DNA of 64,000 nt, taken from contig CM106586.1 of assembly GCA_048013815.1 (NCBI GenBank), positions 18,104,001-18,168,000 of the forward strand, in the 5' to 3' direction. The notes below the pieces were generated by a model that ran no database searches, was not told the origin of the DNA, and worked only from the letters and a program-made list of their open reading frames with translations. Source of the DNA: Setoptus koraiensis (Eukaryota > Animalia > Arthropoda). Below are positions 5,534 to 48,200 of this stretch, one piece after another. Both the position numbers and the translations under genes were made by a program. Within the stretch, counting starts at the first letter, position 1, and the number at the start of each line of letters is the position of its first letter.

Positions 5534-7312
5534 ACAAGAGGGAGATATATATGCGGAGATATGTGGAGAGAGAGAGAGAGGTTGCGTCCTCTCAACGAAG
5601 AATAACAGCCTAATTCGTTCAATTTTTTCGGTGCCTCAGTGGCGTTCCGTGAGCGAGTTGCGTTGATTCGAATCGCCGAGTGGAGTGTCGCGCCGGCGAG
5701 CTCGCCAAGATAATTGTGATGGGCCAGCGTGCGGCTCATAACTGACTCGCTGACTCGCTGCGCCGGCCGCAACTGCAACTCGGCCGCCTTACACGCCACA
5801 AACTAACGGCAACGGTAACAGTGAGATGTCAAGCAACGGGGGCCAGCAGCGAGCGCACTTTGGTCAAGATAATTTGTGGGCCCCCTAGTGAAGGCGGCCA
5901 GAATTGGGGCCACGCACGCACACAGCAAAGCGGGCGGCGGGCGGCGGGCAAAAGTGAGGGCGCAACAAACGGGGCCCGTGCTGGCAGCGGCCTAATGCTG
6001 TGACTACTGTGTATCAGAGGGAAATATGTATGTTATTGAATTATTGAATTGGTTTTATATCATCGCTAACAGCGTGAGCAGCAGTGAAAAATCAACAACA
6101 ACAAGTTGACATTCCTCTGCGAGCTGCCAGCTGCAAATGCTCGAGCGAGCCAGCCAGCGTTCGTTTAATTTGAAAATAATAGAGGCTTAGCCGAAATTTC
6201 GTGAATGGTCATCGTGGTGAGTGGTTAAAATATCATCATCATCTTGCCATAGCGGCCCAATCTTCCAATCCATCTAGTCGCCAGTGGGCCAGCAATGAAT
6301 TGAATGGCCCACTGGCAAGGCCCATTTGTACAATACACACACGCACACTTTTCGTTATAAAGTGCACAATCAAATTTCTGAGTGACATAATCACCAGGAT
6401 CGCGCTGTCGCGCGCCCTCTCTGGTTTCATGGGGCCCCTGCCAAGGGTGCGCCTATTAAACGGCAATTCTAGCCATTTCGGCCACTAGCTCGGCTAGTCG
6501 GCTAGCTCATTAGGAAGTGAGCGCGCGCGCTTCTTGTCGGCCCCACCAACGACTCAGCCGGCCAATTTCTCCAGCTCTCGATGCGCATCGCCCAAATATT
6601 GTCGCCACTGTCGCTCCATAAACTCTTCCGGTTCGATTCGGCCGCCCGAGCGACACCCAACACACAAGCCGGCCTATCTTTTCTCCGGCCAACTTGAGAC
6701 CTAATCTAGTCTGGGCTTTAAATGTCAGCCAGCTGACGAGAAATTTTTTTTTTCCCGACGCACCTAATTCCAAGCTCGAGGCGCCACATGAATAGCGCCA
6801 CATCCGGTTTGATTAATAGCCTTGGCTGCGAGTGGAAAGCATCGAAAATCGATAACAACTAGCTGCCAATGGCTCGCAAGAAAACAGTCCCAAGTAGCGG
6901 GTGGCGAAGCAAGTCCAAAGCGAGCCAAGATAGCAAAAACGATTCCAGATGGTCGCTGGTTTGGGGGGGGCCCCGCTTAAGAGCGCCAATTCATTTCCAT
7001 GTTGGCGCTTATTTCCATGTTGCTGCTGCATAGAAATGAATTGTCGCAAACAAATTAATATGAAACGGTTCTGAAATAACGAGCTGGGGCCAGATTGAGC
7101 AACAACGAGAAAAAAAGTTGTGACTCCAGGATCAATAACCGGCTGACAATATAATTAATTTTCAGTGTAAAAATAGCCACCAATCACACGGCTGTTCGAC
7201 TTAAAAATACCAATTCTTGGGCGCTGTTTCGTTTGGGGGCGCACTGGGCCGGCAGCCCGAAAACTGAGCTCGGGCATAGTTTGCTGACCGGCTTGGCGCA
7301 CTGCCGGCATGG

Positions 7313-22400: not shown

Positions 22401-25400
22401 CACGCCGTGTCGATATTGCCGGATGGGGGATAAGAGGAGAAAGTATCTGTTCCTTTTATGACTTCTTTTCTTTTATTTCTCGTCCATTCATTCCATTTAA
22501 TCTGACTGCATTTACTCTCAATGGTTCGCGGTTGTTGTTGGCGTCAGCAAAGTTTATCAAAGTCGTGGGCGGCCAAAGCAATAGAAAGTAAACACGCGAG
22601 CGAAATCTCGTCGGTATCCGATGATTTAAACCATTGAACTGGCGTCTCTATTGGGCGCTCGCAAATAAGATTCGCGACAGCTTTATTAAGGTGGTTTATC
22701 TGTTGTGTGTGTGTCACGTCAAATTAGGTTTGAAAGTCAGCCTGTTTCGGCGACCGCTTATCTAGCTGGCCGGCAGCCAGACGAGCGGATTGAGTGCATC
22801 TACTTTATTTTACTGTCACCAGTGGCACTGTTCTGGTAGAATTCAATTATTTGCACTCACTTAAGTCTTTTTATGACAAAGAACGGTAACGCACGAGAAA
22901 ACATACAACGCCAATTATAGCCGAGATAAAGTCAATTGAAATTAGCATAACAACAACAATTGAATAACAGCTGCTAGCACTTGTATGTAGCAAATCAGTG
23001 ATATATAATTACTTGGCCCGACACCGAAGCGTCTACCTATTTCGCTCATCAGTTTTAGTTTTATTCATCATCGTTATCACTGGTCGTCATAAACAGTGAC
23101 GTGGGTCGCCGAGGTGACAACGCTCGTTGCTAACGCGAGGTCGACAGTGTGCCCGCTGGATGGGCCCCATCACGAAAAAACTCTTTCCGTTGGACTGCTG
23201 CAGTTTCTATGCGCGTCGGGCTTCATTGATGAGTGCTGGACAGCGCAACGGCAGTATCAGTTCATTCGGCATATCCATTTCCCTGGCTATTGCACCGCGA
23301 AAAAAAAAACGCACGGGCGCTGCCGCGATTGTCCGATGACAACTGTTTATCCTCGCCGTGACGCAACCACATTCGTCATGGGCCCGATTTCGTCCTCGCC
23401 GAGCTCTGTCTCGAGGCTCTGTCGCCGGTGTAGCGGTGGCCACCTTTCGGATATTGCCGCAACGACATTTTTGTCAGCCAACGATGTGTGGGTAGAGATA
23501 GAGAAAAAAAAAGACGCATCATTTTTTATTCATACATTTTTTTTTCTTTTGCGCGCGCGCGCGCGCGCAAAAGAAAAAAAGAAAAACTTCACTCACAGAA
23601 ATTGCGTCACTCTTGTCAGTGGATACTTTGCAGTGCCGATTCGCCACTGTCAACTGGCCTCGCCAGAAATGAACTCACCTGGAAAAATGAATGGCCGTGG
23701 TTCGAAAGCTCGTTTCGCAGTTGCGAATGTGTGTATGTGTGCCAGTGACAGCAGCCGAGTATTATGAACGCGCTCCGGTGAACACTGTCAATGGATAGGC
23801 CAATGCTCACCCAATGGACGGGCCCCCCGAGTCTAACCCCAGATGGCGTATGTGTCTGGCGGTGGATGTCATCGGATAGTCTTGCTTGGCATCTTACACG
23901 ATGATGATGATGATGATTCGAAATGATGATTCAACAACTCACAATGATACGCGCGACACAATTGCGAATGCGAATTCAATGGAGCCGACGATCGATACGA
24001 GACCACGAGTGGCGACTCCAAAATGAAACTAAATAACGTGAAACTAAATAATATAAAAACGAGCTCGAACTCAACTAACAACGAGCCGAGAAATGATAAA
24101 AAGAAAACATGATGTCAAGATGAAACAATAATGACAACAATGAAATGCGCCCTCTTTCCACTTGATCTGTGTTTATCAACCTGTTTCGCCGGCGAGTCGG
24201 CCACTGGCCCTCATTTTTGGCGGCACGCACCCGCTGTGAGCTGTCTCACAGCCTGAGAGTCTCAGGGCTCACAGACGCGACACAGATGACAGCTCAACTT
24301 CCGTTTGCGCTCACAATATGTTATGTAATACCCAAAATAACTGTTTTTCGGCGCACACGACGCGATGCTATTTTTGTAGACGCACGCGATTCGAGCAAAA
24401 CACGCTCGTTACGCGAGCTGTCGGCGTAACGCGTGCTTTCCATTGTGACAACAAATAAAATATCGTCTATGCGTATTGGTTTGGTTTCCTCATTGGGCCG
24501 GCGAGTTTTTCGATCGATAGCAACCGATGCGATAAGAATGCAATTGCAAAATAAAATGACAAGCTTGTTCCATTTGGTCACCATTGCAGAGCGCTTGTTG
24601 TCGCTTATTTGCATGACTTGATACTTGACAACGCTAGCCAGCGCCGCCACTTGAGACGGTTGGCTGGCGAGCTCAAGATTAAACTGTCTACGCACGGTCG
24701 ACAACAACCGACCATCAATTGACGATGGGCCGCTGCACTCAATTGGCTAGACAATCAACAATGACAACAACAAGCAACACAACGGATCATCATGTCAATT
24801 TGTTTGTATTTAGAATATGGGGCCGGCAGTAACAATAAGTGATCGACACAATTCAATACAAGTGTGCTTGAGTAGCAAACTAAACTTGATACACCTAACT
24901 CGCCACGGTGCCACTTGTCATCACAAGTGGCAAGTAGTGCAAAAGCATGTAGTTTGCCGCTGACAGTTGAACGACAACAACAACAACAACAACAACTGCA
25001 CTGTCTCTATTTCACCCGATTTGAGTCGGCCCGATTGGGGCCCGATGAGCAGATCGTGATGGACGAGCGAGCAACTATGTTGGCCATTAGCTGGCCTAGA
25101 CATACGTTGGCATTGTCACATGTTCAATCGTTGTTGTCCATGGCTCACCGTAATTAAAATCGACAACTTGTAAAATCGACCTTGTCGTGTCGCACGTGCA
25201 ATAGTGGCCGGATATGCGCACCTAACATTGGGCCCAATTGATCGATTCAAATTCATTGAGCGATTCTCCAAATGGCTTGCCTAAACGTTAATTGATCATT
25301 TGGCGATTCGCGCGCGCAATTAATAAATGTATTAATTGATTTTTATTTAATTAAAAATTTCATTTAATTGTTGATACCTAATGATGAGTGAAATACCGGC

Positions 25401-31190: not shown

Positions 31191-32708
31191 CTATTTTTGC
31201 AGATCGTTGAAAGCATTCTCAAAACATTTTTTGAGTTCGGCGAATGATACTACGAGTACGTGTTGTTCATCTCTGGATATTAAGCATATCTTTTCGGGGG
31301 ATCCAGAATCAAACTTCATGAGTGTAGATATAACGTGACCCATATCCAACCATGCTGAGCCATCCTCGTTAAGTTGATGAAATAAGTAATCGCGGAAAAG
31401 CTTCAACATATATCTGTCACCTGTTTCAGACCAATTGAGATCCATACGCAATTCAGGTCGTTCGTTGATCATCCCAAGCTTCACTAATACCCTAAGCAGT
31501 CTTCCATTCAAAACCTCTCTATCCAGATCCATCTGAATGCTATCGATTTTGTCATAGGCCAGATTGAGTTGAACGTAAAATCTTGCTCCTATCATTGGCA
31601 TAACATCGTTGATTGTTCGGTTCTGTTGTTTTATGGACAACAAAGTTACAATCAACGCTCTGAGGTCATTTGAGTAAGTTCTCGATACCAAATCAAGAGA
31701 TTGTTGACAATAATCTTTAGAGGCCGCACTTAAAGAGCTAGTGGCTAACGCTAGACACAATCTACCAAATGCAGCTAAATCATCTTGTTGGAGTTGTTGA
31801 TAGAACATTTTGCCGCTAGCCATCTGGATCGTTAGATCATGAGTAACAACGTCAAATAGGCCGCATGCGTTCAATCTTATCCTTGGGTATTGTGATGGCT
31901 GCAATTGTGATGGAGGACAATTTGGAACACTAGACGTCAATATGATTTTAGTTGGGTCAAATATCCTATAGGCTAGTCCGTGCGAGTGTATCAACCTGAG
32001 AGCAGAAGATATTTGTATTATATAATGCCACAATAAATTCTCTGGCAACAGCTTAGTTTTTAAAATAGCCTGCTGTTGACTGTATGGTCTATTTGCGGCT
32101 AATCTGTTTATGCCAACTGGTCCCGATGTTGGACTGGAATTAACAAAGTATTGTTGCATGAGTGTTGTCGCTTGCGGAAAATACGGATATACAAATACAA
32201 GAGAATTATCTCCAAAAGCTCTTGTGGTGAAAACTTGTAACAATTTTACAATATTTGCACATTGAATCTTTTTCCAAGCATCAATAGTATTTAGTAGAGA
32301 TTTTGAGTTAGCTGCATTGGGCTGGTATGAATGCACACGACGCATACAAACATATTGATTAGTCTCGATATTGGTGGCTCTATAAACGCTTTGTACAAAT
32401 CCAAATGTGTTAGATAGAATACTGTTATGGCCAGTCTGAAGCGGATATAAATAAGTATAATCTAGTACCCGTTCTGGTAATGATTCTAAGAGTTCGCTCT
32501 CTGTAGGCATGAGATTAGTATTGTTTGTGGTGGATGTCACATTCTGTCGTTGGAGTATTTCCTCTTTCAATTCGTTAGATTCTTCGCCCATGATGGTAGA
32601 TCCAGAATAGGTTACGGCTCCTGCCGAAGTTGGGTACGCCGAAGTATTTGGCTGTCCGGTGTAATACATTCTGTGTACGCCGTTGTATTCATCGCTGGAT
32701 TGTGACAT
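31191..32708 (-). CDS. PAN3: PAN2-PAN3 deadenylase subunit PAN3 (pseudokinase, coiled coil, C-terminal knob), intronless, 505 aa
   Basis: Motifs FTTRAFGDNSLVFVY, LLPENLLWHYIIQISSALRLIHSHGLA, GRLLRVLVKLGMINERPE, WSETGDRYMLKLFRDYLFHQ are diagnostic of PAN3. Confidence 0.97.
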   Translation of the reverse strand: MSQSSDEYNGVHRMYYTGQPNTSAYPTSAGAVTYSGSTIMGEESNELKEEILQRQNVTSTTNNTNLMPTESELLESLPERVLDYTYLYPLQTGHNSILSNTFGFVQSVYRATNIETNQYVCMRRVHSYQPNAANSKSLLNTIDAWKKIQCANIVKLLQVFTTRAFGDNSLVFVYPYFPQATTLMQQYFVNSSPTSGPVGINRLAANRPYSQQQAILKTKLLPENLLWHYIIQISSALRLIHSHGLAYRIFDPTKIILTSSVPNCPPSQLQPSQYPRIRLNACGLFDVVTHDLTIQMASGKMFYQQLQQDDLAAFGRLCLALATSSLSAASKDYCQQSLDLVSRTYSNDLRALIVTLLSIKQQNRTINDVMPMIGARFYVQLNLAYDKIDSIQMDLDREVLNGRLLRVLVKLGMINERPELRMDLNWSETGDRYMLKLFRDYLFHQLNEDGSAWLDMGHVISTLMKFDSGSPEKICLISRDEQHVLVVSFAELKKCFENAFNDLQK

Positions 32709-33272
32709 ATTACAATAATATTATATTATATATAATGATATATATTTATGTAATAACTGTGTATATACTGGATATATATATTTTTAAAAGGGCTCAGATG
32801 GCGTCATGTACGGGAGATGGACGTCTCGTTATAGAGCTGCCAATGGTAAAAAGAAAACACATATGCAATATGCATTGATACTGGTACACTGTGGTACCGA
32901 ACGTTCCAGTTTTTCCTTGCGCACAATGTGCGCATGCTCCCAATTCCCGTAGCGCCAAATACAATTGTTTTTTTGGAATTGTATTTGGCGCTGCAGCGAA
33001 CCGAGGCATGCGCAGATGACACGCAAGAAAAAACTAGAACGTCCGGGACTAACAGTGTCAGTACATAAACTGCTCATTCTATTTTCGCTATTCTTCTTTA
33101 CAACACTCGAGCTTCGACATTGACTGCTAAGACTTGTCTTACGTTACGCCATTTAAGCCGTTTTTACTTAGAATCACATCTATTCACATACATCCGTATA
33201 TATATATATATAAACATACATATATATATTTATATATGTTGATATATATATTTTTATACACACATACATAAT
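32709..33272. promoter_or_regulatory. Bidirectional promoter and 5' UTRs shared by PAN3 and Sirt1 (564 bp)
   Basis: Head-to-head genes; inverted TGCGCATGC/GCATGCGCA (NRF1/EWG-like) at 32929-32937 and 33006-33014; (TA)-rich blocks next to both ATGs. Confidence 0.7.
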
Positions 33273-35015
33273 ATGTCACAATCTAGCGATGAAGACGACG
33301 ATCATCCGGATGTAAACTGTCTCAGAGGAACCAATTGGAAACCCAACCCAGTTATAGGCTTAAACAATTGGGTGCCGAGGAGAATGTGTGACGGATCATC
33401 GCCGAGAGAAATTCTAAATCATATGCTCCCCAATACGCCTATACCCGAACATCTGGACGAGGTATTCTTGTGGCAAATTATATTTAATCTTTCAAACGAA
33501 CCACCTTGTAGAAAAAAACTACCTGATTATAATACATTGGCTGATGCTGTTGATCTTATAAAAAAATCAAAGAATATCATTGTACTAACTGGCGCAGGTG
33601 TCAGTACTTCATCGGGTATACCGGACTTTAGAAGCCGCGATGGAATTTACGCGCGCCTCCATCAAGATTTCCCCGATCTACCTGATCCCCAGGCTATGTT
33701 TGACATTAGCTATTTCAGGAAAGATCCGAGGCCCTTCTTTAAATTCTCAAAAGAAATCTACCCCGGCCAATTTCAGCCAGCCATTGGCCACTATTTTATT
33801 AAGTGTCTAGAGAAGCATGGAAAACTACTGAGAAATTACACTCAAAACATAGACACTCTTGAGCAGGTAGCTGGCATCCAACGAGTCATCAACTGCCACG
33901 GTTCATTTGCCTCGGCCACATGCACTAATTGCAAGTATCAGGTTGACGCTTCGGTAATCAAGCAAGATATTTTCGAGCAAAAGATACCAAAGTGCCCTAA
34001 ATGTCCAGTTGATTCTCCGCAGATAGCTGTCATGAAACCGGACATTGTGTTCTTTGGTGAAGGGCTCCCGGATACATTTCATGAAGCCATTGGCAAAGAT
34101 AAAGATGAGTGTGACTTACTCATAGTTATTGGTTCGTCTATGAAAGTTAGACCAGTAGCATTAATACCCAGCTCCATACCAGACAATATTCCGCAGATCT
34201 TAATCAACAGGGAGCCTCTAGGCCATCTAGTCTTCGATATTGAGTTGCTTGGAGATTGTGATGGTATCATCCAGGAGCTATGTCTAAAACTTGGGGAAGA
34301 TTGGACTGATATTTGTACCCCTGGCGCAGAACAACTTACTGAATTAACGGAACTGCCCAACGTTAACGAAACTGGCTCCATCATACCCCGAACAGACAAT
34401 ACTCAAGCGATGGAAACCGAAGATTTAGTATGCAAAGATTCATCTTCTGATCTACCAATATGCGACACTGTTGCCACGAGCGATGATCTTGGCGGTTGTA
34501 GTTCTCAAGTTGTAGAATCGACATCGAGTAACGTCAGGAAGTTAGAAGTTGACAGATTGATCTCTCAGGACTGTTCGAGTACTTCAGATACAAACGTCGC
34601 TTCGATGTTGGATAAGGAAGCTGACGGGTATGAGTCCGTGGTCGCTGAGATAGATAGTCCCGCGGCTGGTTCCGATCTGAGCTCTATCGACGCCTATGAT
34701 GACGTCGCCGCTATGTTACCCCCATCGTCATATCTCTACATAGCACCCAGCAGATGTATTTTCAAGGGTGCCGAGATCAATCTTCAAAGTTTAGAAAATT
34801 ACAAAAAGAAAGCCGCCCATGAAACTGCAACGGTTCCACAGGGTGGTCAACCTACCGTCTCCAAGCATATGGCATTATTAGCATCTGATTCTTCGAATTT
34901 CTCATCTGCCGGGTCATCAATTGGAAACTCTTCCTCTAATACATCCTCATCGCCTGATTGTTCGTCCATAGAAAGATCTCCAGCGAGTGAGCATTCTACT
35001 GATGTTAGAGTTTGA
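33273..35015 (+). CDS. Sirt1: NAD-dependent deacetylase sirtuin-1 (Sir2 class I), intronless, 580 aa
   Basis: GAGVSTSSGIPDFRS, TQNID, HGSF, CxxC...CxxC, KPDIVFFGE, GSSMKVRP, NREP; N-terminal helical domain (LWQII...EPP.RKK); C-terminal YLYIAPSRCIFKGAEI resembles the SIRT1 CTR/ESA segment. Confidence 0.97.
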   Translation: MSQSSDEDDDHPDVNCLRGTNWKPNPVIGLNNWVPRRMCDGSSPREILNHMLPNTPIPEHLDEVFLWQIIFNLSNEPPCRKKLPDYNTLADAVDLIKKSKNIIVLTGAGVSTSSGIPDFRSRDGIYARLHQDFPDLPDPQAMFDISYFRKDPRPFFKFSKEIYPGQFQPAIGHYFIKCLEKHGKLLRNYTQNIDTLEQVAGIQRVINCHGSFASATCTNCKYQVDASVIKQDIFEQKIPKCPKCPVDSPQIAVMKPDIVFFGEGLPDTFHEAIGKDKDECDLLIVIGSSMKVRPVALIPSSIPDNIPQILINREPLGHLVFDIELLGDCDGIIQELCLKLGEDWTDICTPGAEQLTELTELPNVNETGSIIPRTDNTQAMETEDLVCKDSSSDLPICDTVATSDDLGGCSSQVVESTSSNVRKLEVDRLISQDCSSTSDTNVASMLDKEADGYESVVAEIDSPAAGSDLSSIDAYDDVAAMLPPSSYLYIAPSRCIFKGAEINLQSLENYKKKAAHETATVPQGGQPTVSKHMALLASDSSNFSSAGSSIGNSSSNTSSSPDCSSIERSPASEHSTDVRV

Positions 35016-45200: not shown

Positions 45201-48200
45201 AAGGCGAGGTGCAAGATGCACAGGGTGCCGGCCGTGTGGTTGTTGGGGTGCGCAGGCGCGCGCGCTCACCTGTGTGACCATTAGGAATTTTCGCGCACCA
45301 TATATCACATGGAGCATACATTTGCGTCGTTATAACGACATCGCCGGTGCCGCTCACCGTTGGCCCGCTTTGAGCAGGCGCGACAGGTTGGTGCAGACAG
45401 GTCGGTGCAGGCGGCTCGGTGCAGGCGCACGGTGCAGCCGCAAAAGCAGCCGCACGGTGCAGGCAGACATGACGTGCCATTATGGTGATGGGCATGACGT
45501 AAACATGCCCATTAATAGCGGCATCGCGGCGCGATAATGGTTTTGCTTATAACTTGTGGCATCATTGCTGGCCGCTAATGATGCCACAAGTTATATCATC
45601 ATACAAGTTGCGTAGATGTATTGGGCATACAGACGACAACAAACAAACATTCCAGACAGCGTGCACGGCACCCAACACTCGACAGGTGAATTGTCTGCAC
45701 CATCGTGCACCGTCGTGCACCAATATGCACCGACGCCCGTCATCGGGCAGCGTCGGCTGGACAATTGAGCTTGGGAATGGCGGGTCGAAAGCTCACTGAC
45801 TCGATAATGATGATGACCATAGATCATAGCGCCAGCGAGCGATATGGATATCACCGACAGCGTGACTCATCGCTCGCTGGCAAGACGATTTTTAGCGGCA
45901 TTGGTCTGGCATGCGAGCGGCTTGCGTAATCTGCATACTAGGCACTGTTTGTGGCTGCTTCAATTTTGAATTTGTTTCCATTTTTGCTGATCTTGCTCAA
46001 TGGCTCAGCGCCGTCGGCTGAAAGTGGGCGAATAAGTCAAATGGCAACGACAAGATAATCGTGGCTCCCAATGTGTCGCCTGAGACAAATGCACCGCATT
46101 GAGATGTAGAGCCTGTTGAGTGGATAATACAGTGGATAATTCATTTACACACGACATGACAAATGGGCTGTTGATATGTGTCTGGCAAATGAACGCAAAT
46201 CAAATGTTGTTGTCGTTCATCGTCGTCGAAAGATGATCGTATCAGATTGGATTGCGATGTAGTCGCAATGTATCCATGTTGCGATGAGACGACGACCACT
46301 AAGTAGTGCCAATGACTCTTGTTTGTAATTGCTACAGTCTGTCTGTTTCCATTTGTATTCGTCGTTGTATGTTGGCCCATGTTGGCCGATATACGACGAC
46401 CATATACATGTAATATGGCTGCGGCGTTTGTGCCGGCTGCTTGTGGTAGCTGCAAGTGATAGGCTAAACTTGATGAAAAAATTTTCAAACATTTCAATTA
46501 ATTCGCTGCTGGCCGACATAATGCCTGGGATGCAAAAATGCTGCACACATTTTTGGATAATGTCACATTTTTACTGTCGGCCGGCCGGCTAATCAAGCAC
46601 GACAAGAATGCTACCTGAGAGTGGCCACTGAGATTCGAATGTGGCCACGATAGTATTCACAACAGCAACTACAACAGCAACAACAACAACGCCAGCAACA
46701 CCGGCACCAACAACCACCGCAACAACCGCCACAACAACCACCGCCACAACAACCGCGACATGTGCAAGTGCATTAAAGAGAGACTCACTCAATTAACAGA
46801 GATCTCAATCAATGGCGACCAATGGTCACTCATCCAGTTGCTCACAGTTGCGGCCGTGATGATCTAATGACCGTTATCCACGTCTGGTTGGCGTGCTTGG
46901 TCTGTACAAAAGCAGCAGCAGCAGCGAGTCTCTAAATTAGATTTATCCAGATATATCATTTGCCAGATTGTACAGTATATCGACGACGATTGTACTGACA
47001 GACGATCGATACGTTGTAGCAATACGTTGTAGACGCTGCTGCCCATAAGCCGCATGAGCCGCATAATGTGAGCAAATGGCGCGCGCGCTATCATTAAATA
47101 ATCTTAAATCATAAACAAGATTAATCATGATTAGAGAGAGCGATTAGAGGAATGAGAAATGATCGTGCCTCGTCCCTCTAATCTCTCGCTAATGTAATTA
47201 ACAGCGTAATCATTTAATAGCATAGCTTACAGCCTGACGGACAGGTTTGCACAGGTGAGCGCGCGCGATAGGACGATGATTGTTTCATCATGAGACTGAT
47301 TAGTTTTATCAGTCAGCGTTGGCTGGAGCTGTAGTTGCAGCTCACACACAGTCGGGCTATTTCGGATATATACTGGATATATATTATAATATATATGTAT
47401 TAGTATTTATCCACTTTATAGTATACATAGTGTACATAGCGAAGTAAACACTGTGATGGAATGCGTCGTCAAGTGTCACTTTTAATGTTTTTCCAGCGGA
47501 CCTGGCGCCCGGCCGGCAGATGGCGCTGGCCGGGCATCACCGGCCCAGTGTGTGCAATCGCGAATCGCAACTTGCAACTTGCAGTGGCCGGCCGGCCACT
47601 GTTACGCAACAACCACTGTAACAACAATGATCAGCTAAGTAAATGTTGTTGTTTGGCGGAGGTTATTACGCAAATTAGATAACAACAAGATTGCATAAGT
47701 TAAGTGAGGTAATTGATTTGGCTGGCTGGCTGGCTGGCTGGCCGGCGAGCGAGAGAGGCAGCGCATAATTAAGCGCTTGTGGTAGCCAGTTGTTGCTATA
47801 GGTTGCTGTTGGCTGTCGGCTGTTGGCCGGTGGTTGCTGCTCAGTGGTCGCCGTCGTGAACAGCATCTGAGATGAGCGAGCCACGATAAGCACAACAAAT
47901 AAACATTGGCTCGACTTGTTTTGGTTGGGTTGTTGTTGCTGCTGTTGTTGTTGTTGTGTCGAAACAAGCCACTTGTGACTAGCTGATTGAGCTGTGAGCG
48001 CACCGTGTGTCGCACGGAGGCGAGCAAAGTCGGCCACAGGTGAGACAGGTGATATAATCGCCGGGCTTGTGTGTTGTGAGGACAACTTTTGACTGCAGAC
48101 TCGACGGGCACAAGCTGTCAACTGTTGCCGGGCAACTGCGCCGACACTGCACCGCCGACTGCACCGCCGGCTGCACCGACAACCGCACCGACAACTGCAC

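What the first reader, a model, noticed from the sequence alone, without database searches (positions are those of the whole stretch)
32688..33293. Unrelated divergent genes PAN3 and Sirt1 share a 25-nt start (both MSQSSDE), forming an inverted repeat around their promoter
Seen: PAN3 (-) starts TAAT-ATG-TCA-CAA-TCC-AGC-GAT-GAA (32712-32688) and Sirt1 (+) starts TAAT-ATG-TCA-CAA-TCT-AGC-GAT-GAA (33269-33293). That is 24/25 nt, including synonymous positions and 4 nt of UTR, and both are preceded by (TA)-rich blocks. Knowledge, from memory: vertebrate SIRT1 has an acidic SDEED segment just before WTPRPRIGP, matching SDEDDD...WKPNPVIG here, so the motif looks native to Sirt1. Inference: PAN3 acquired its start codon and N-terminus from its neighbour by inverted duplication or fold-back gene conversion. 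Possible consequences are shared N-terminal acetylation or CK2-type signals, co-regulated translation, or pairing between one mRNA's 5' end and promoter antisense RNA.
Basis: partly seen in the sequence, partly recalled or inferred. Interest (0 to 1): 0.8.

Follow-up and report, generated by a model that had tools for sequence, protein, structure and literature searches.

The report
PAN3 borrowed Sirt1's promoter and start
In this gall-mite genome the whole 564-bp spacer between two unrelated head-to-head genes is a decayed mirror-image duplication, so PAN3, which has lost its usual zinc-finger beginning, now most likely starts from a flipped copy of its neighbour Sirt1's upstream region, start codon and first 7-9 codons.

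Summary
The 25-mer occurs exactly twice in the window, at the two start codons (0 expected). It is the best-kept tip of a 620-nt diverged palindrome, 32681-33300. The arms are 286 and 324 nt, with 221 of 275 aligned positions identical around a 10-nt loop, and they fill the whole PAN3-Sirt1 spacer.

Both genes are intronless ORFs of an eriophyoid mite. The copy went from Sirt1 to PAN3:
- The acidic SDED cluster before WKP is native to mite Sirtuin-1s.
- A relative's Sirt1 (88% identical) starts MLQSSDEEDD behind an orthologous upstream arm.
- Many other eriophyoid PAN3s begin with a CCCH zinc finger. That finger is missing here and anywhere in the 64 kb.
- None of seven other eriophyoid PAN3 loci lies next to Sirt1.

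Best reading: a rearrangement truncated PAN3, and the junction carries a fold-back (inverted) copy of Sirt1's upstream region and first 9-10 codons. This produced a symmetric divergent spacer and a chimeric N-terminus. The event is old, about the age of a species split with dS 0.33-0.41.

Transposon, artefact and chance readings fail. First-stage notes list many similar cases in this genome, all unchecked.

The parts
31191..32708 (-). PAN3-like gene. It is a single intronless ORF of 505 aa with the pseudokinase and C-terminal Pan3 domains intact. The N-terminal CCCH zinc finger is absent.
   Evidence: ORF. Pfam PF18101 E=3e-54. 74-77% identical to Fragariocoptes setiger PAN3. No finger anywhere in the window. 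N-terminal alignment A2.
33273..35015 (+). Sirtuin-1 gene. It is a single intronless ORF of 580 aa with a very short N-terminus before the WKP motif.
   Evidence: ORF. Pfam PF02146 E=6e-65. 88% identical orthologue P0121. Alignment A3.
32681..32966 (-). PAN3-side arm of the palindrome (286 nt). It is the inverted copy of the Sirt1 upstream region, leader, ATG and about 9 codons.
   Evidence: 221/275 aligned positions identical to the other arm, score 186 versus -55 +/- 15 for shuffles. BLAST self-hits.
32967..32976 (.). 10-nt loop at the centre of symmetry.
   Evidence: Sequence. Fold.
32977..33300 (+). Sirt1-side arm (324 nt). It is the presumed original: Sirt1 upstream region, leader, ATG and about 9 codons.
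   Evidence: Orthologous to L001 46-275 at 85% identity. Arm alignment.
32879..33063 (.). Central hairpin-forming core. It has a perfect 16-bp stem (32951-32966 / 32977-32992) inside arms that are about 74% identical.
   Evidence: I1. BLAST 190 nt at 73.7%. Single-strand DNA fold -54.2 kcal/mol, z = -10.2.
32688..32712 (-).
33269..33293 (+).
32952..32959 (-). TTTGGCGC, E2F-consensus-like, mirrored at 32984-32991 (+) and identical in the relative. The reading as a factor site is from memory of the consensus and is untested.
   Evidence: TTGGCGCT occurs 9 times against 3.2 +/- 2.0 expected in the window.
32930..32937 (-). GCATGCGC, NRF1/Ewg-consensus-like, mirrored at 33006-33013 (+). It is not enriched in the window.
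32796..32804 (-). ACGCCATYT block, YY1/Pho-core-like, mirrored at 33146-33154 (+), inside a 23-nt island with 18/23 identical.
   Evidence: 5 occurrences against 1.4 +/- 1.0 expected..
32713..32790 (-). TA-rich leader on the PAN3 side, homologous to 33196-33268 on the Sirt1 side. The relative L001 lacks this segment.

Best explanation
The shared 25 nt are the best-preserved end of an old inverted duplication of about 300 nt. The Sirt1 upstream region, its AT-rich leader, its ATG in the context TAATATG and its first 9-10 codons were copied in reverse orientation directly beside the original, 10 nt apart. The copy was joined in frame to a PAN3 gene that had lost its own 5' end, including the CCCH zinc finger. 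The most economical route is a chromosome break next to the Sirt1 upstream region. The broken end folded back on itself and was extended by copying about 300 nt. It was then joined to a second break inside the 5' coding part of PAN3 (fold-back or templated-inversion repair at a rearrangement junction). The result is a symmetric divergent spacer built from two diverged copies of one upstream region. It gives two mRNAs with homologous (not complementary) leaders, and a chimeric PAN3 whose first 7 residues are Sirt1's. Shown here: the palindrome, its extent, the direction of copying, the loss of the finger and the lineage-specific adjacency. Inferred: the repair mechanism, that the PAN3-side arm acts as a promoter, and that the ATG at 32708 is the start used.
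For: 1. The palindrome spans the whole spacer and ends about 27 nt (nine codons) inside both ORFs.
2. Direction of copying: Sirt1's SSDEDDD...WKP aligns with the acidic cluster before WKP in other mite Sirtuin-1s. The 88%-identical orthologue starts MLQSSDEEDD. Its upstream 230 nt are 85% identical to the Sirt1-side arm.
3. PAN3's TAC AAC (Y, N) lines up with Sirt1's GAC GAC (D, D).
4. Many other eriophyoid PAN3s (P0002-P0013) begin with a CCCH finger in the same exon. The window has none within +/-30 kb.
5. Sirt1 is not the neighbour of PAN3 in any of 7 other eriophyoid loci.
6. The finger is also missing near PAN3 in three other eriophyoids, so its loss is tolerable.
7. The ATG at 32708 is the first in-frame ATG after a stop, with A at -3, and no ATG lies in the last ~95 nt of the PAN3-side leader.
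8. Age: 28 arm-specific changes on the PAN3 side against 8 and 13 on the two Sirt1 arms, and species dS of 0.33-0.41.
9. The 31-mers of the palindrome centre are all held by a run of a different sample and study.
Against: No transcript evidence was obtained. Promoter activity of the PAN3-side arm and use of its ATG therefore rest on sequence alone. Met14 of PAN3 is an alternative start. The relative's contig L001 runs 44 nt past the inner end of its Sirt1 arm without any sign of a left arm, so the palindrome may be absent or interrupted there, and the relative age of the duplication and the species split is unresolved. The fold-back mechanism is inferred from the geometry only. A two-step route gives the same end state: a whole-gene inverted Sirt1 duplicate followed by a deletion or fusion.
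Confidence: 0.75

Rival explanations
1. The duplication is real, but the copied ATG is a relic. PAN3 is transcribed from a start site downstream of 32708 and translated from Met14 (32669), so MSQSSDE is not part of the PAN3 protein.
For: Met14 is in frame. No RNA data were obtained. Several other eriophyoid PAN3 models start right at the FPTSAA motif, further in.
Against: The transcription start would have to fall within the 39 nt between the two ATGs. If 32708 is in the mRNA, it is the first AUG, in frame, with A at -3. All 7 copied codons are intact, although the rest of the arm has diverged by 20% or more.
Confidence: 0.12
2. The tips are kept alike by recurrent gene conversion between the arms, not by selection on the codons.
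For: The outer 32 nt differ at 3 sites (9%), the inner arm at 20-36% depending on the alignment. Both window arms share a TA-rich leader that the relative lacks.
Against: Only about 7 of the 25 sites are effectively neutral. With about 35% divergence, at most 1 change there has P of about 0.2, so codon constraint suffices. In the outer block the PAN3 arm is no closer to the window's Sirt1 arm than the relative's is (3 against 4 differences). Conversion tracts this short are unusual (general knowledge).
Confidence: 0.12
3. The 620-nt unit is a foldback or MITE-like transposon inserted between the genes, and both genes recruited start codons from its terminal inverted repeats.
For: The unit has terminal inverted repeats, AT-rich subterminal parts and a central hairpin.
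Against: There is no other copy or fragment in the 64 kb. The 20-mer core has only two chance hits in JGI metagenome contigs, one bacterial and one in an unrelated ORF. No target-site duplication is evident. The Sirt1-side arm sits at the orthologous place in a species with dS of about 0.4. Its end encodes the acidic cluster native to Sirtuin-1.
Confidence: 0.03
4. There was no duplication. Two unrelated upstream regions look alike because they carry the same factor sites in mirror order.
For: TTGGCGCT and ACGCCATYT are mildly enriched in the window.
Against: Collinear similarity runs over about 275 aligned nt, including non-motif sequence, the leader and the codons. 63 other window segments score at most -26 against 186. 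GCATGCGC is not enriched.
Confidence: 0.03
5. Assembly artefact, for example an unsplit long read folded into the assembly.
For: A first-stage note reports such an artefact elsewhere in this assembly (unchecked).
Against: The arms differ by substitutions and blocks, not by read-error noise. Both ORFs are intact. The centre's 31-mers are held in full by a run from another sample and study. The PAN3-side arm supplies the first ATG of the PAN3 ORF, whose upstream frame is closed by a stop.
Confidence: 0.02

Closest known systems
Chimeric genes made by partial duplication that recruits another gene's 5' end (for example Drosophila Sdic and jingwei; named from general knowledge, not checked here)
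   Same: A recipient gene acquires the promoter region, leader, start codon and first codons of an unrelated donor through a partial duplication. The donor stays intact.
   Different: Here the copy is inverted and lies directly against its template, so donor and recipient end up head to head on a palindromic spacer. The recipient is an old conserved single-copy-type gene that lost a domain, not a new gene.
Inverted duplications at inversion breakpoints (staggered-break model; Ranz et al. 2007, PMC1885836)
   Same: These are inverted copies of formerly unique sequence, a few hundred bp long (median 321 bp in D. yakuba; 286 and 324 nt here), created at a rearrangement junction.
   Different: In that model the two copies sit at opposite ends of the inverted segment. 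Here they are 10 nt apart, which fits fold-back or templated-inversion repair better.
Fold-back inversions and palindrome formation at DNA breaks (yeast and tumour genomes; general knowledge, related paper PMC8053094 listed, not read)
   Same: The geometry matches: a short spacer flanked by inverted copies that begin at the break.
   Different: Copying stopped after about 300 nt and the end was joined to another gene, so there was no chromosome-scale palindrome. The product was then fixed in the species and kept for a long time.
Bidirectional promoters of head-to-head gene pairs
   Same: The two start codons are 564 nt apart, on opposite strands, with shared motif content.
   Different: The symmetry here comes from duplication of one upstream region, not from one shared core. 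It extends into both coding regions.

Membership tests
5'-end / promoter-capture chimeric gene | A paralogous segment is shared by two otherwise unrelated genes. | tested here: met
   Arms 32681-32966 and 32977-33300, 221/275 identical, score far above all controls. Beyond codon 10 there is no similarity ('beyond': 6 of 30 positions identical).
5'-end / promoter-capture chimeric gene | The segment is native to the donor. | tested here: met
   The orthologous Sirt1 in L001 has the same upstream arm and starts MLQSSDEEDD. The acidic cluster before WKP is present in other mite Sirtuin-1s.
5'-end / promoter-capture chimeric gene | Orthologues of the recipient lack the segment. | tested here: met
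   31 eriophoid PAN3 homologues were read. None starts MSQSSDE. Many start with a CCCH finger.
5'-end / promoter-capture chimeric gene | The chimeric mRNA and protein are actually made from the captured start. | not testable with these tools
The exact proteins are not in the contig index.
Bidirectional promoter | Head-to-head genes lie less than 1 kb apart. | tested here: met
   ATGs at 32708 (-) and 33273 (+).
Bidirectional promoter | Transcription runs in both directions from the shared region. | not testable with these tools
   No RNA data were obtained.
Foldback / MITE transposon | Multiple copies in the genome. | tested here: not met
   No other copy in the 64 kb. The 20-mer has only chance hits in metagenome contigs. 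The rest of the genome was not searchable.
Foldback / MITE transposon | Target-site duplication at the ends. | tested here: not met
   The flanks just outside the 32-nt arms show no direct repeat.
Breakpoint inverted duplication by staggered breaks (Ranz 2007) | The two copies flank the inverted segment. | tested here: not met
   The copies are separated by 10 nt only.
PAN3 (PAN2-PAN3 deadenylase subunit) | Pseudokinase plus C-terminal Pan3 domain. | tested here: met
   PF18101 E=3e-54 and PF00069.
PAN3 (PAN2-PAN3 deadenylase subunit) | N-terminal CCCH zinc finger. | tested here: not met
   Absent from the ORF and from all six frames of the window. It is also absent near PAN3 in L008-L010.
Sirtuin-1 | SIR2 catalytic domain, with best matches to Sirtuin-1 proteins. 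| tested here: met
   PF02146 E=6e-65. The named hits are sirtuin-1.

The most novel reading that the evidence does not exclude
This locus is one instance of a genome-wide habit of this mite lineage. Rearrangement junctions are healed with a fold-back copy of the new neighbour's promoter, leader and start codon. This rescues 5'-truncated genes and leaves palindromic divergent promoters and chimeric N-termini. It would be a main way in which eriophyoid genomes scramble gene order and shrink without losing genes. First-stage notes on the same genome list many look-alike pairs: AP-4/E2F, URM1/C11orf54-like, RPL23A/NOC2L, TAF6/p47, PDPK1/PPIL2 and eIF1/YTHDF. All are unchecked, and I could not read those windows.
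Probability: 0.35. Interest if true: 0.8.

Novelty: new variant of a known kind. Interest (0 to 1): 0.58.

Why it matters
The locus shows, base by base, how an old conserved gene can survive losing its own promoter and first domain. It does so by taking an inverted copy of its new neighbour's upstream region and start codon. It also shows a way to create a symmetric divergent promoter and co-regulation of two unrelated genes, an mRNA deadenylase subunit and a deacetylase, in one step. Eriophyoid genomes are extremely compact and intron-poor: 84% of genes are intronless and the median intergenic distance is 538 bp in Aculops lycopersici (PMC7738191). They have almost no conserved gene order (bioRxiv 10.64898/2026.08.24.746826). 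If junction repair by promoter copying is common there, it would help explain how such scrambling is tolerated. For PAN3 itself, the locus is a natural experiment on whether the poly(A)-binding zinc finger is dispensable.

Tried and rejected
- **Read laying.** No transcript or read-level evidence was obtained.
- **Exact-protein look-ups.** Neither window protein is in the contig index.
- **Relative's PAN3.** A search with the first 150 aa of PAN3, meant to find fragmentary PAN3 of the close relative, returned nothing. Whether the relative has the PAN3-side arm stays open.
- **Metagenome scan.** A scan for the 20-mer core gave one GC-rich bacterial contig and one unrelated AT-rich contig where the match lies inside another ORF. 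Both are chance hits.
- **Upstream regions in other species.** Upstream regions of PAN3 and Sirt1 in other eriophyoids show no nucleotide similarity to the arms. They are too diverged to be informative.
- **Staggered-break inversion model.** Considered and rejected on geometry.
- **Transposon, convergence and artefact readings.** Rejected, as detailed under the rival explanations.
- **Factor-site readings.** The E2F-, NRF1- and YY1-like labels rest on my memory of the consensus sequences. Only two of the three motifs are mildly enriched in the window. A second inverted TTGGCGCT pair near 7000 is not a comparable promoter.
- **Larger palindromes in other eriophyoids.** A scan of about 110 kb of other eriophyoid loci found only 33-40-nt hairpins.
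Full report
**Observation**

With up to three mismatches allowed, these are the only two matches in the 64-kb window, and 100 dinucleotide-preserving shuffles gave none. The repeat finder extends the pair to 32 nt with 29 identical (I2).

Each copy contains the first ATG after an in-frame stop of a long uninterrupted ORF:
- 31191-32708 (-), 505 aa, with the Pan3 pseudokinase domain PF18101 at E = 3e-54.
- 33273-35015 (+), 580 aa, with the SIR2 domain PF02146 at E = 6e-65.

Both proteins begin MSQSSDE.

The similarity does not stop at the 25-mer. It runs inward through the whole spacer.
- The repeat finder reports a second inverted pair at the centre: 32894-32966 and 32977-33049, 75% complementary, 10 nt apart (I1).
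- I took the PAN3-side arm (32681-32966, read outward) and the Sirt1-side arm (32977-33300). A global alignment has 221 identical of 275 aligned positions and scores 186.
- Controls score far lower: -55 +/- 15 for 500 shuffles, -50 for the non-inverted orientation, and at most -26 for 63 other segments of the window in either orientation (earlier version).
- BLAST of the window against its own reverse strand recovers the centre (190 nt, 73.7%) and the outer parts (105 nt, 70.5%). It finds no other copy of the spacer anywhere in the window.
- The centre has a perfect 16-bp stem around a 10-nt loop. As single-stranded DNA it folds at -54.2 kcal/mol, against -22.8 +/- 3.1 for shuffles (z = -10.2).

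The object is therefore a 620-nt diverged palindrome. It fills the 564 nt between the two ATGs and reaches about 27 nt (nine codons) into each ORF.

**Organism and gene context**

The best named PAN3 match is from Fragariocoptes setiger (74-77% identity), followed by some thirty unnamed sequences from assemblies of sequencing runs that form one group with it. The window therefore comes from an eriophyoid (gall or rust) mite.

Intronless genes and spacers of about 0.5 kb are normal for this group. In Aculops lycopersici 84% of genes are intronless and the median intergenic distance is 538 bp (PMC7738191). Gene order is hardly conserved among eriophyoids (bioRxiv 10.64898/2026.08.24.746826).

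**Direction of copying**

Three lines of evidence say the sequence is native to Sirt1 and foreign to PAN3.

1. In an alignment with Sirtuin-1 of other mites and arachnids, the window's SSDEDDD-HPDVNC-LRGTNWKP lines up with the acidic cluster and the S-x-L-S stretch that precede the conserved WKP motif.
2. A close relative's Sirt1 (P0121, 88% identical, on the 5.2-kb contig L001) starts MLQSSDEEDD. The 230 nt upstream of and into its ORF are 85% identical to the window's Sirt1-side arm.
3. Many other eriophyoid PAN3 proteins (P0002-P0013) begin with a CCCH zinc finger encoded in the same single exon. Behind it come a low-complexity linker and the motif FPTSAA, which is where the window's protein becomes alignable, at residue 25.

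The window has no such finger. A tblastn with four finger sequences and a pattern scan of all six frames both find none.

PAN3's codons 8-9 (TAC AAC) sit opposite Sirt1's GAC GAC, so the copied piece ran to about codon 10. Beyond that the two genes show no similarity.

**Adjacency**

In F. setiger, PAN3 and Sirt1 are on different contigs with other neighbours. In six further eriophyoid PAN3 loci the upstream neighbour is never Sirt1, and tblastn with Sirt1 finds nothing within the flanks. Four of them share a downstream PAN3 - CRAL-TRIO - COX4 order that the window lacks. The PAN3-Sirt1 pairing is therefore a derived rearrangement in the window's lineage.

Three of these loci also lack the finger within 6 kb. 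Loss of the finger has therefore happened more than once and seems tolerable.

**Age**

Between the window and L001, Sirt1 has dS = 0.41 (Nei-Gojobori) or 0.33 at fourfold-degenerate sites, and dN = 0.06.

In the inner part of the arms, the three-way comparison gives these counts:

| Site pattern | Sites |
|---|---|
| All three identical | 116 |
| PAN3 arm alone differs | 28 |
| Relative's Sirt1 arm alone differs | 13 |
| Window's Sirt1 arm alone differs | 8 |

A MAFFT-based count gives 43, 10 and 13 for the last three rows.

The 13 against 8 does not separate the two orders of events. The 28 changes in 168 sites on the PAN3 arm equal about what a neutral lineage would collect since the split (dS/2). 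The duplication is therefore about as old as, or older than, the split.

Two facts pull the other way:
- Both window arms share a TA-rich leader that L001 lacks.
- L001 continues 44 nt past the inner end of its arm without any left arm.

I leave the order of duplication and species split open.

**Why the tip is the best-kept part**

The outer 32 nt differ at 3 sites, and the inner arm differs at 20-36% depending on the alignment. Only about 7 of the 25 positions are effectively free (4 leader bases and the synonymous sites). With about 35% divergence, at most one change there has a probability near 0.2. In contrast, zero changes at the roughly 18 replacement sites would be very unlikely if they were free (about 5e-4). 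Constraint on the codons, and perhaps on the start context, in both genes is enough. Gene conversion is not needed, though it is not excluded.

**Mechanism (inferred)**

Two inverted copies 10 nt apart are the signature of a fold-back. A broken end beside the Sirt1 upstream region anneals to itself and is extended along its own strand for about 300 nt. It is then joined to another broken end, here inside the 5' coding part of PAN3, in frame. Out-of-frame or promoterless products of a conserved gene like PAN3 would probably not persist, which explains why only an in-frame junction is seen.

Inverted duplications of similar size (median 321 bp) are common at Drosophila inversion breakpoints (PMC1885836). 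In the staggered-break model, however, the copies end up at opposite ends of the inversion, which does not fit here. A two-step route gives the same end state: a full inverted Sirt1 duplicate followed by a deletion that fused its first codons to PAN3.

**How it probably works now (inferred)**

Each arm keeps the same ordered blocks:
- TTTGGCGC at the centre, identical in both arms and in the relative.
- GCATGCGC.
- A block of about 20 nt, AAAAACTRGAACGTYCGG.
- ACGCCATYT.
- A TA-rich leader.
- TAATATG.

From memory, the first, second and fourth resemble the E2F, NRF1/Ewg and YY1/Pho consensus sites. I did not test binding. Only TTGGCGCT and ACGCCATYT are mildly enriched in the window.

If both arms are active, PAN3 and Sirt1 are driven by two diverged copies of one upstream region. 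Their mRNAs then start with homologous leaders and the same start context. Pairing would need read-through across the centre.

**Rivals**

- Transposon: unlikely. There are no other copies and no target-site duplication. The Sirt1 arm sits at the orthologous place in the relative, and its end encodes native Sirtuin-1 sequence.
- Chance or motif convergence: excluded by the controls.
- Assembly artefact: unlikely. Both ORFs are intact, the arms differ by substitutions, and all sampled 31-mers of the centre are held by a run from another sample and study.
- Relic start: this stays open. The copied ATG may be unused and PAN3 may start at Met14. I give this about 12%.

**Link to the rest of the scan**

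First-stage notes on the same genome describe many similar pairs: promoter, leader and start shared by unrelated divergent neighbours, plus a note calling it a repeated mechanism. These notes are unchecked and I could not read those windows. They do not support this locus. They do raise the chance that the process is general in this genome, which is the reading I give as the novel case.

**Verdict**

Expression-level claims are untested. This is a clear example of 5'-end capture by an adjacent inverted duplication. It is a new variant of a known kind, of moderate interest alone and of higher interest if it proves recurrent.

Noticed in passing
window 32890-33055 (runs X5-X7): Runs labelled organism C hold 53-74% of the 31-mers of 31800-34200. 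They are not listed as holders of the palindrome centre, while X1, X4 and X2 hold all of it. The centre may differ or be missing in that population, or their contigs may break there.
   Followed up: no
L001:1-44: In the relative, the 44 nt upstream of the conserved AATTGTATTTGGCGC have no match in the window and no inverted partner in L001. The cause may be a larger loop, a lost left arm, or the ancestral flank of Sirt1 before the duplication.
   Followed up: partly
L008, L009, L010 (PAN3 loci of other eriophyoids): PAN3 models there also lack the CCCH zinc finger, and no finger is found within 6 kb. F. setiger, L003 and L004 keep it in the same exon. The finger therefore seems to have been lost repeatedly in Eriophyoidea.
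   Followed up: partly
window 33273-33340: Sirt1 here and in the relative has only 21 residues before the WKP motif, where other mites have 90-190. The long N-terminal region of Sirtuin-1 has been almost entirely lost.
   Followed up: partly
window 45548-45595: A hairpin with a perfect 20-nt stem and a 10-nt loop, in a stretch without long ORFs. Its function is unknown.
   Followed up: no
window 6982-7009: A second inverted pair of TTGGCGCT, 12 nt apart, next to a direct repeat ATTTCCATGTTG. It is not obviously at a gene start.
   Followed up: partly
window 23539-23580; 14.3, 20.5, 28.6, 46.7, 51.8 and 56.5 kb: The other strong self-matches are a (GC)n microsatellite between A/T runs and CAA/CAG-type coding repeats. 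They are ordinary low-complexity sequence.
   Followed up: yes
window 33236-33271: A 12-codon upstream ORF in the Sirt1-side leader ends in the TAA of TAATATG, one base before the Sirt1 ATG. The PAN3-side leader has no ATG in its last ~95 nt. This matters only if the transcription start lies upstream of it.
   Followed up: no
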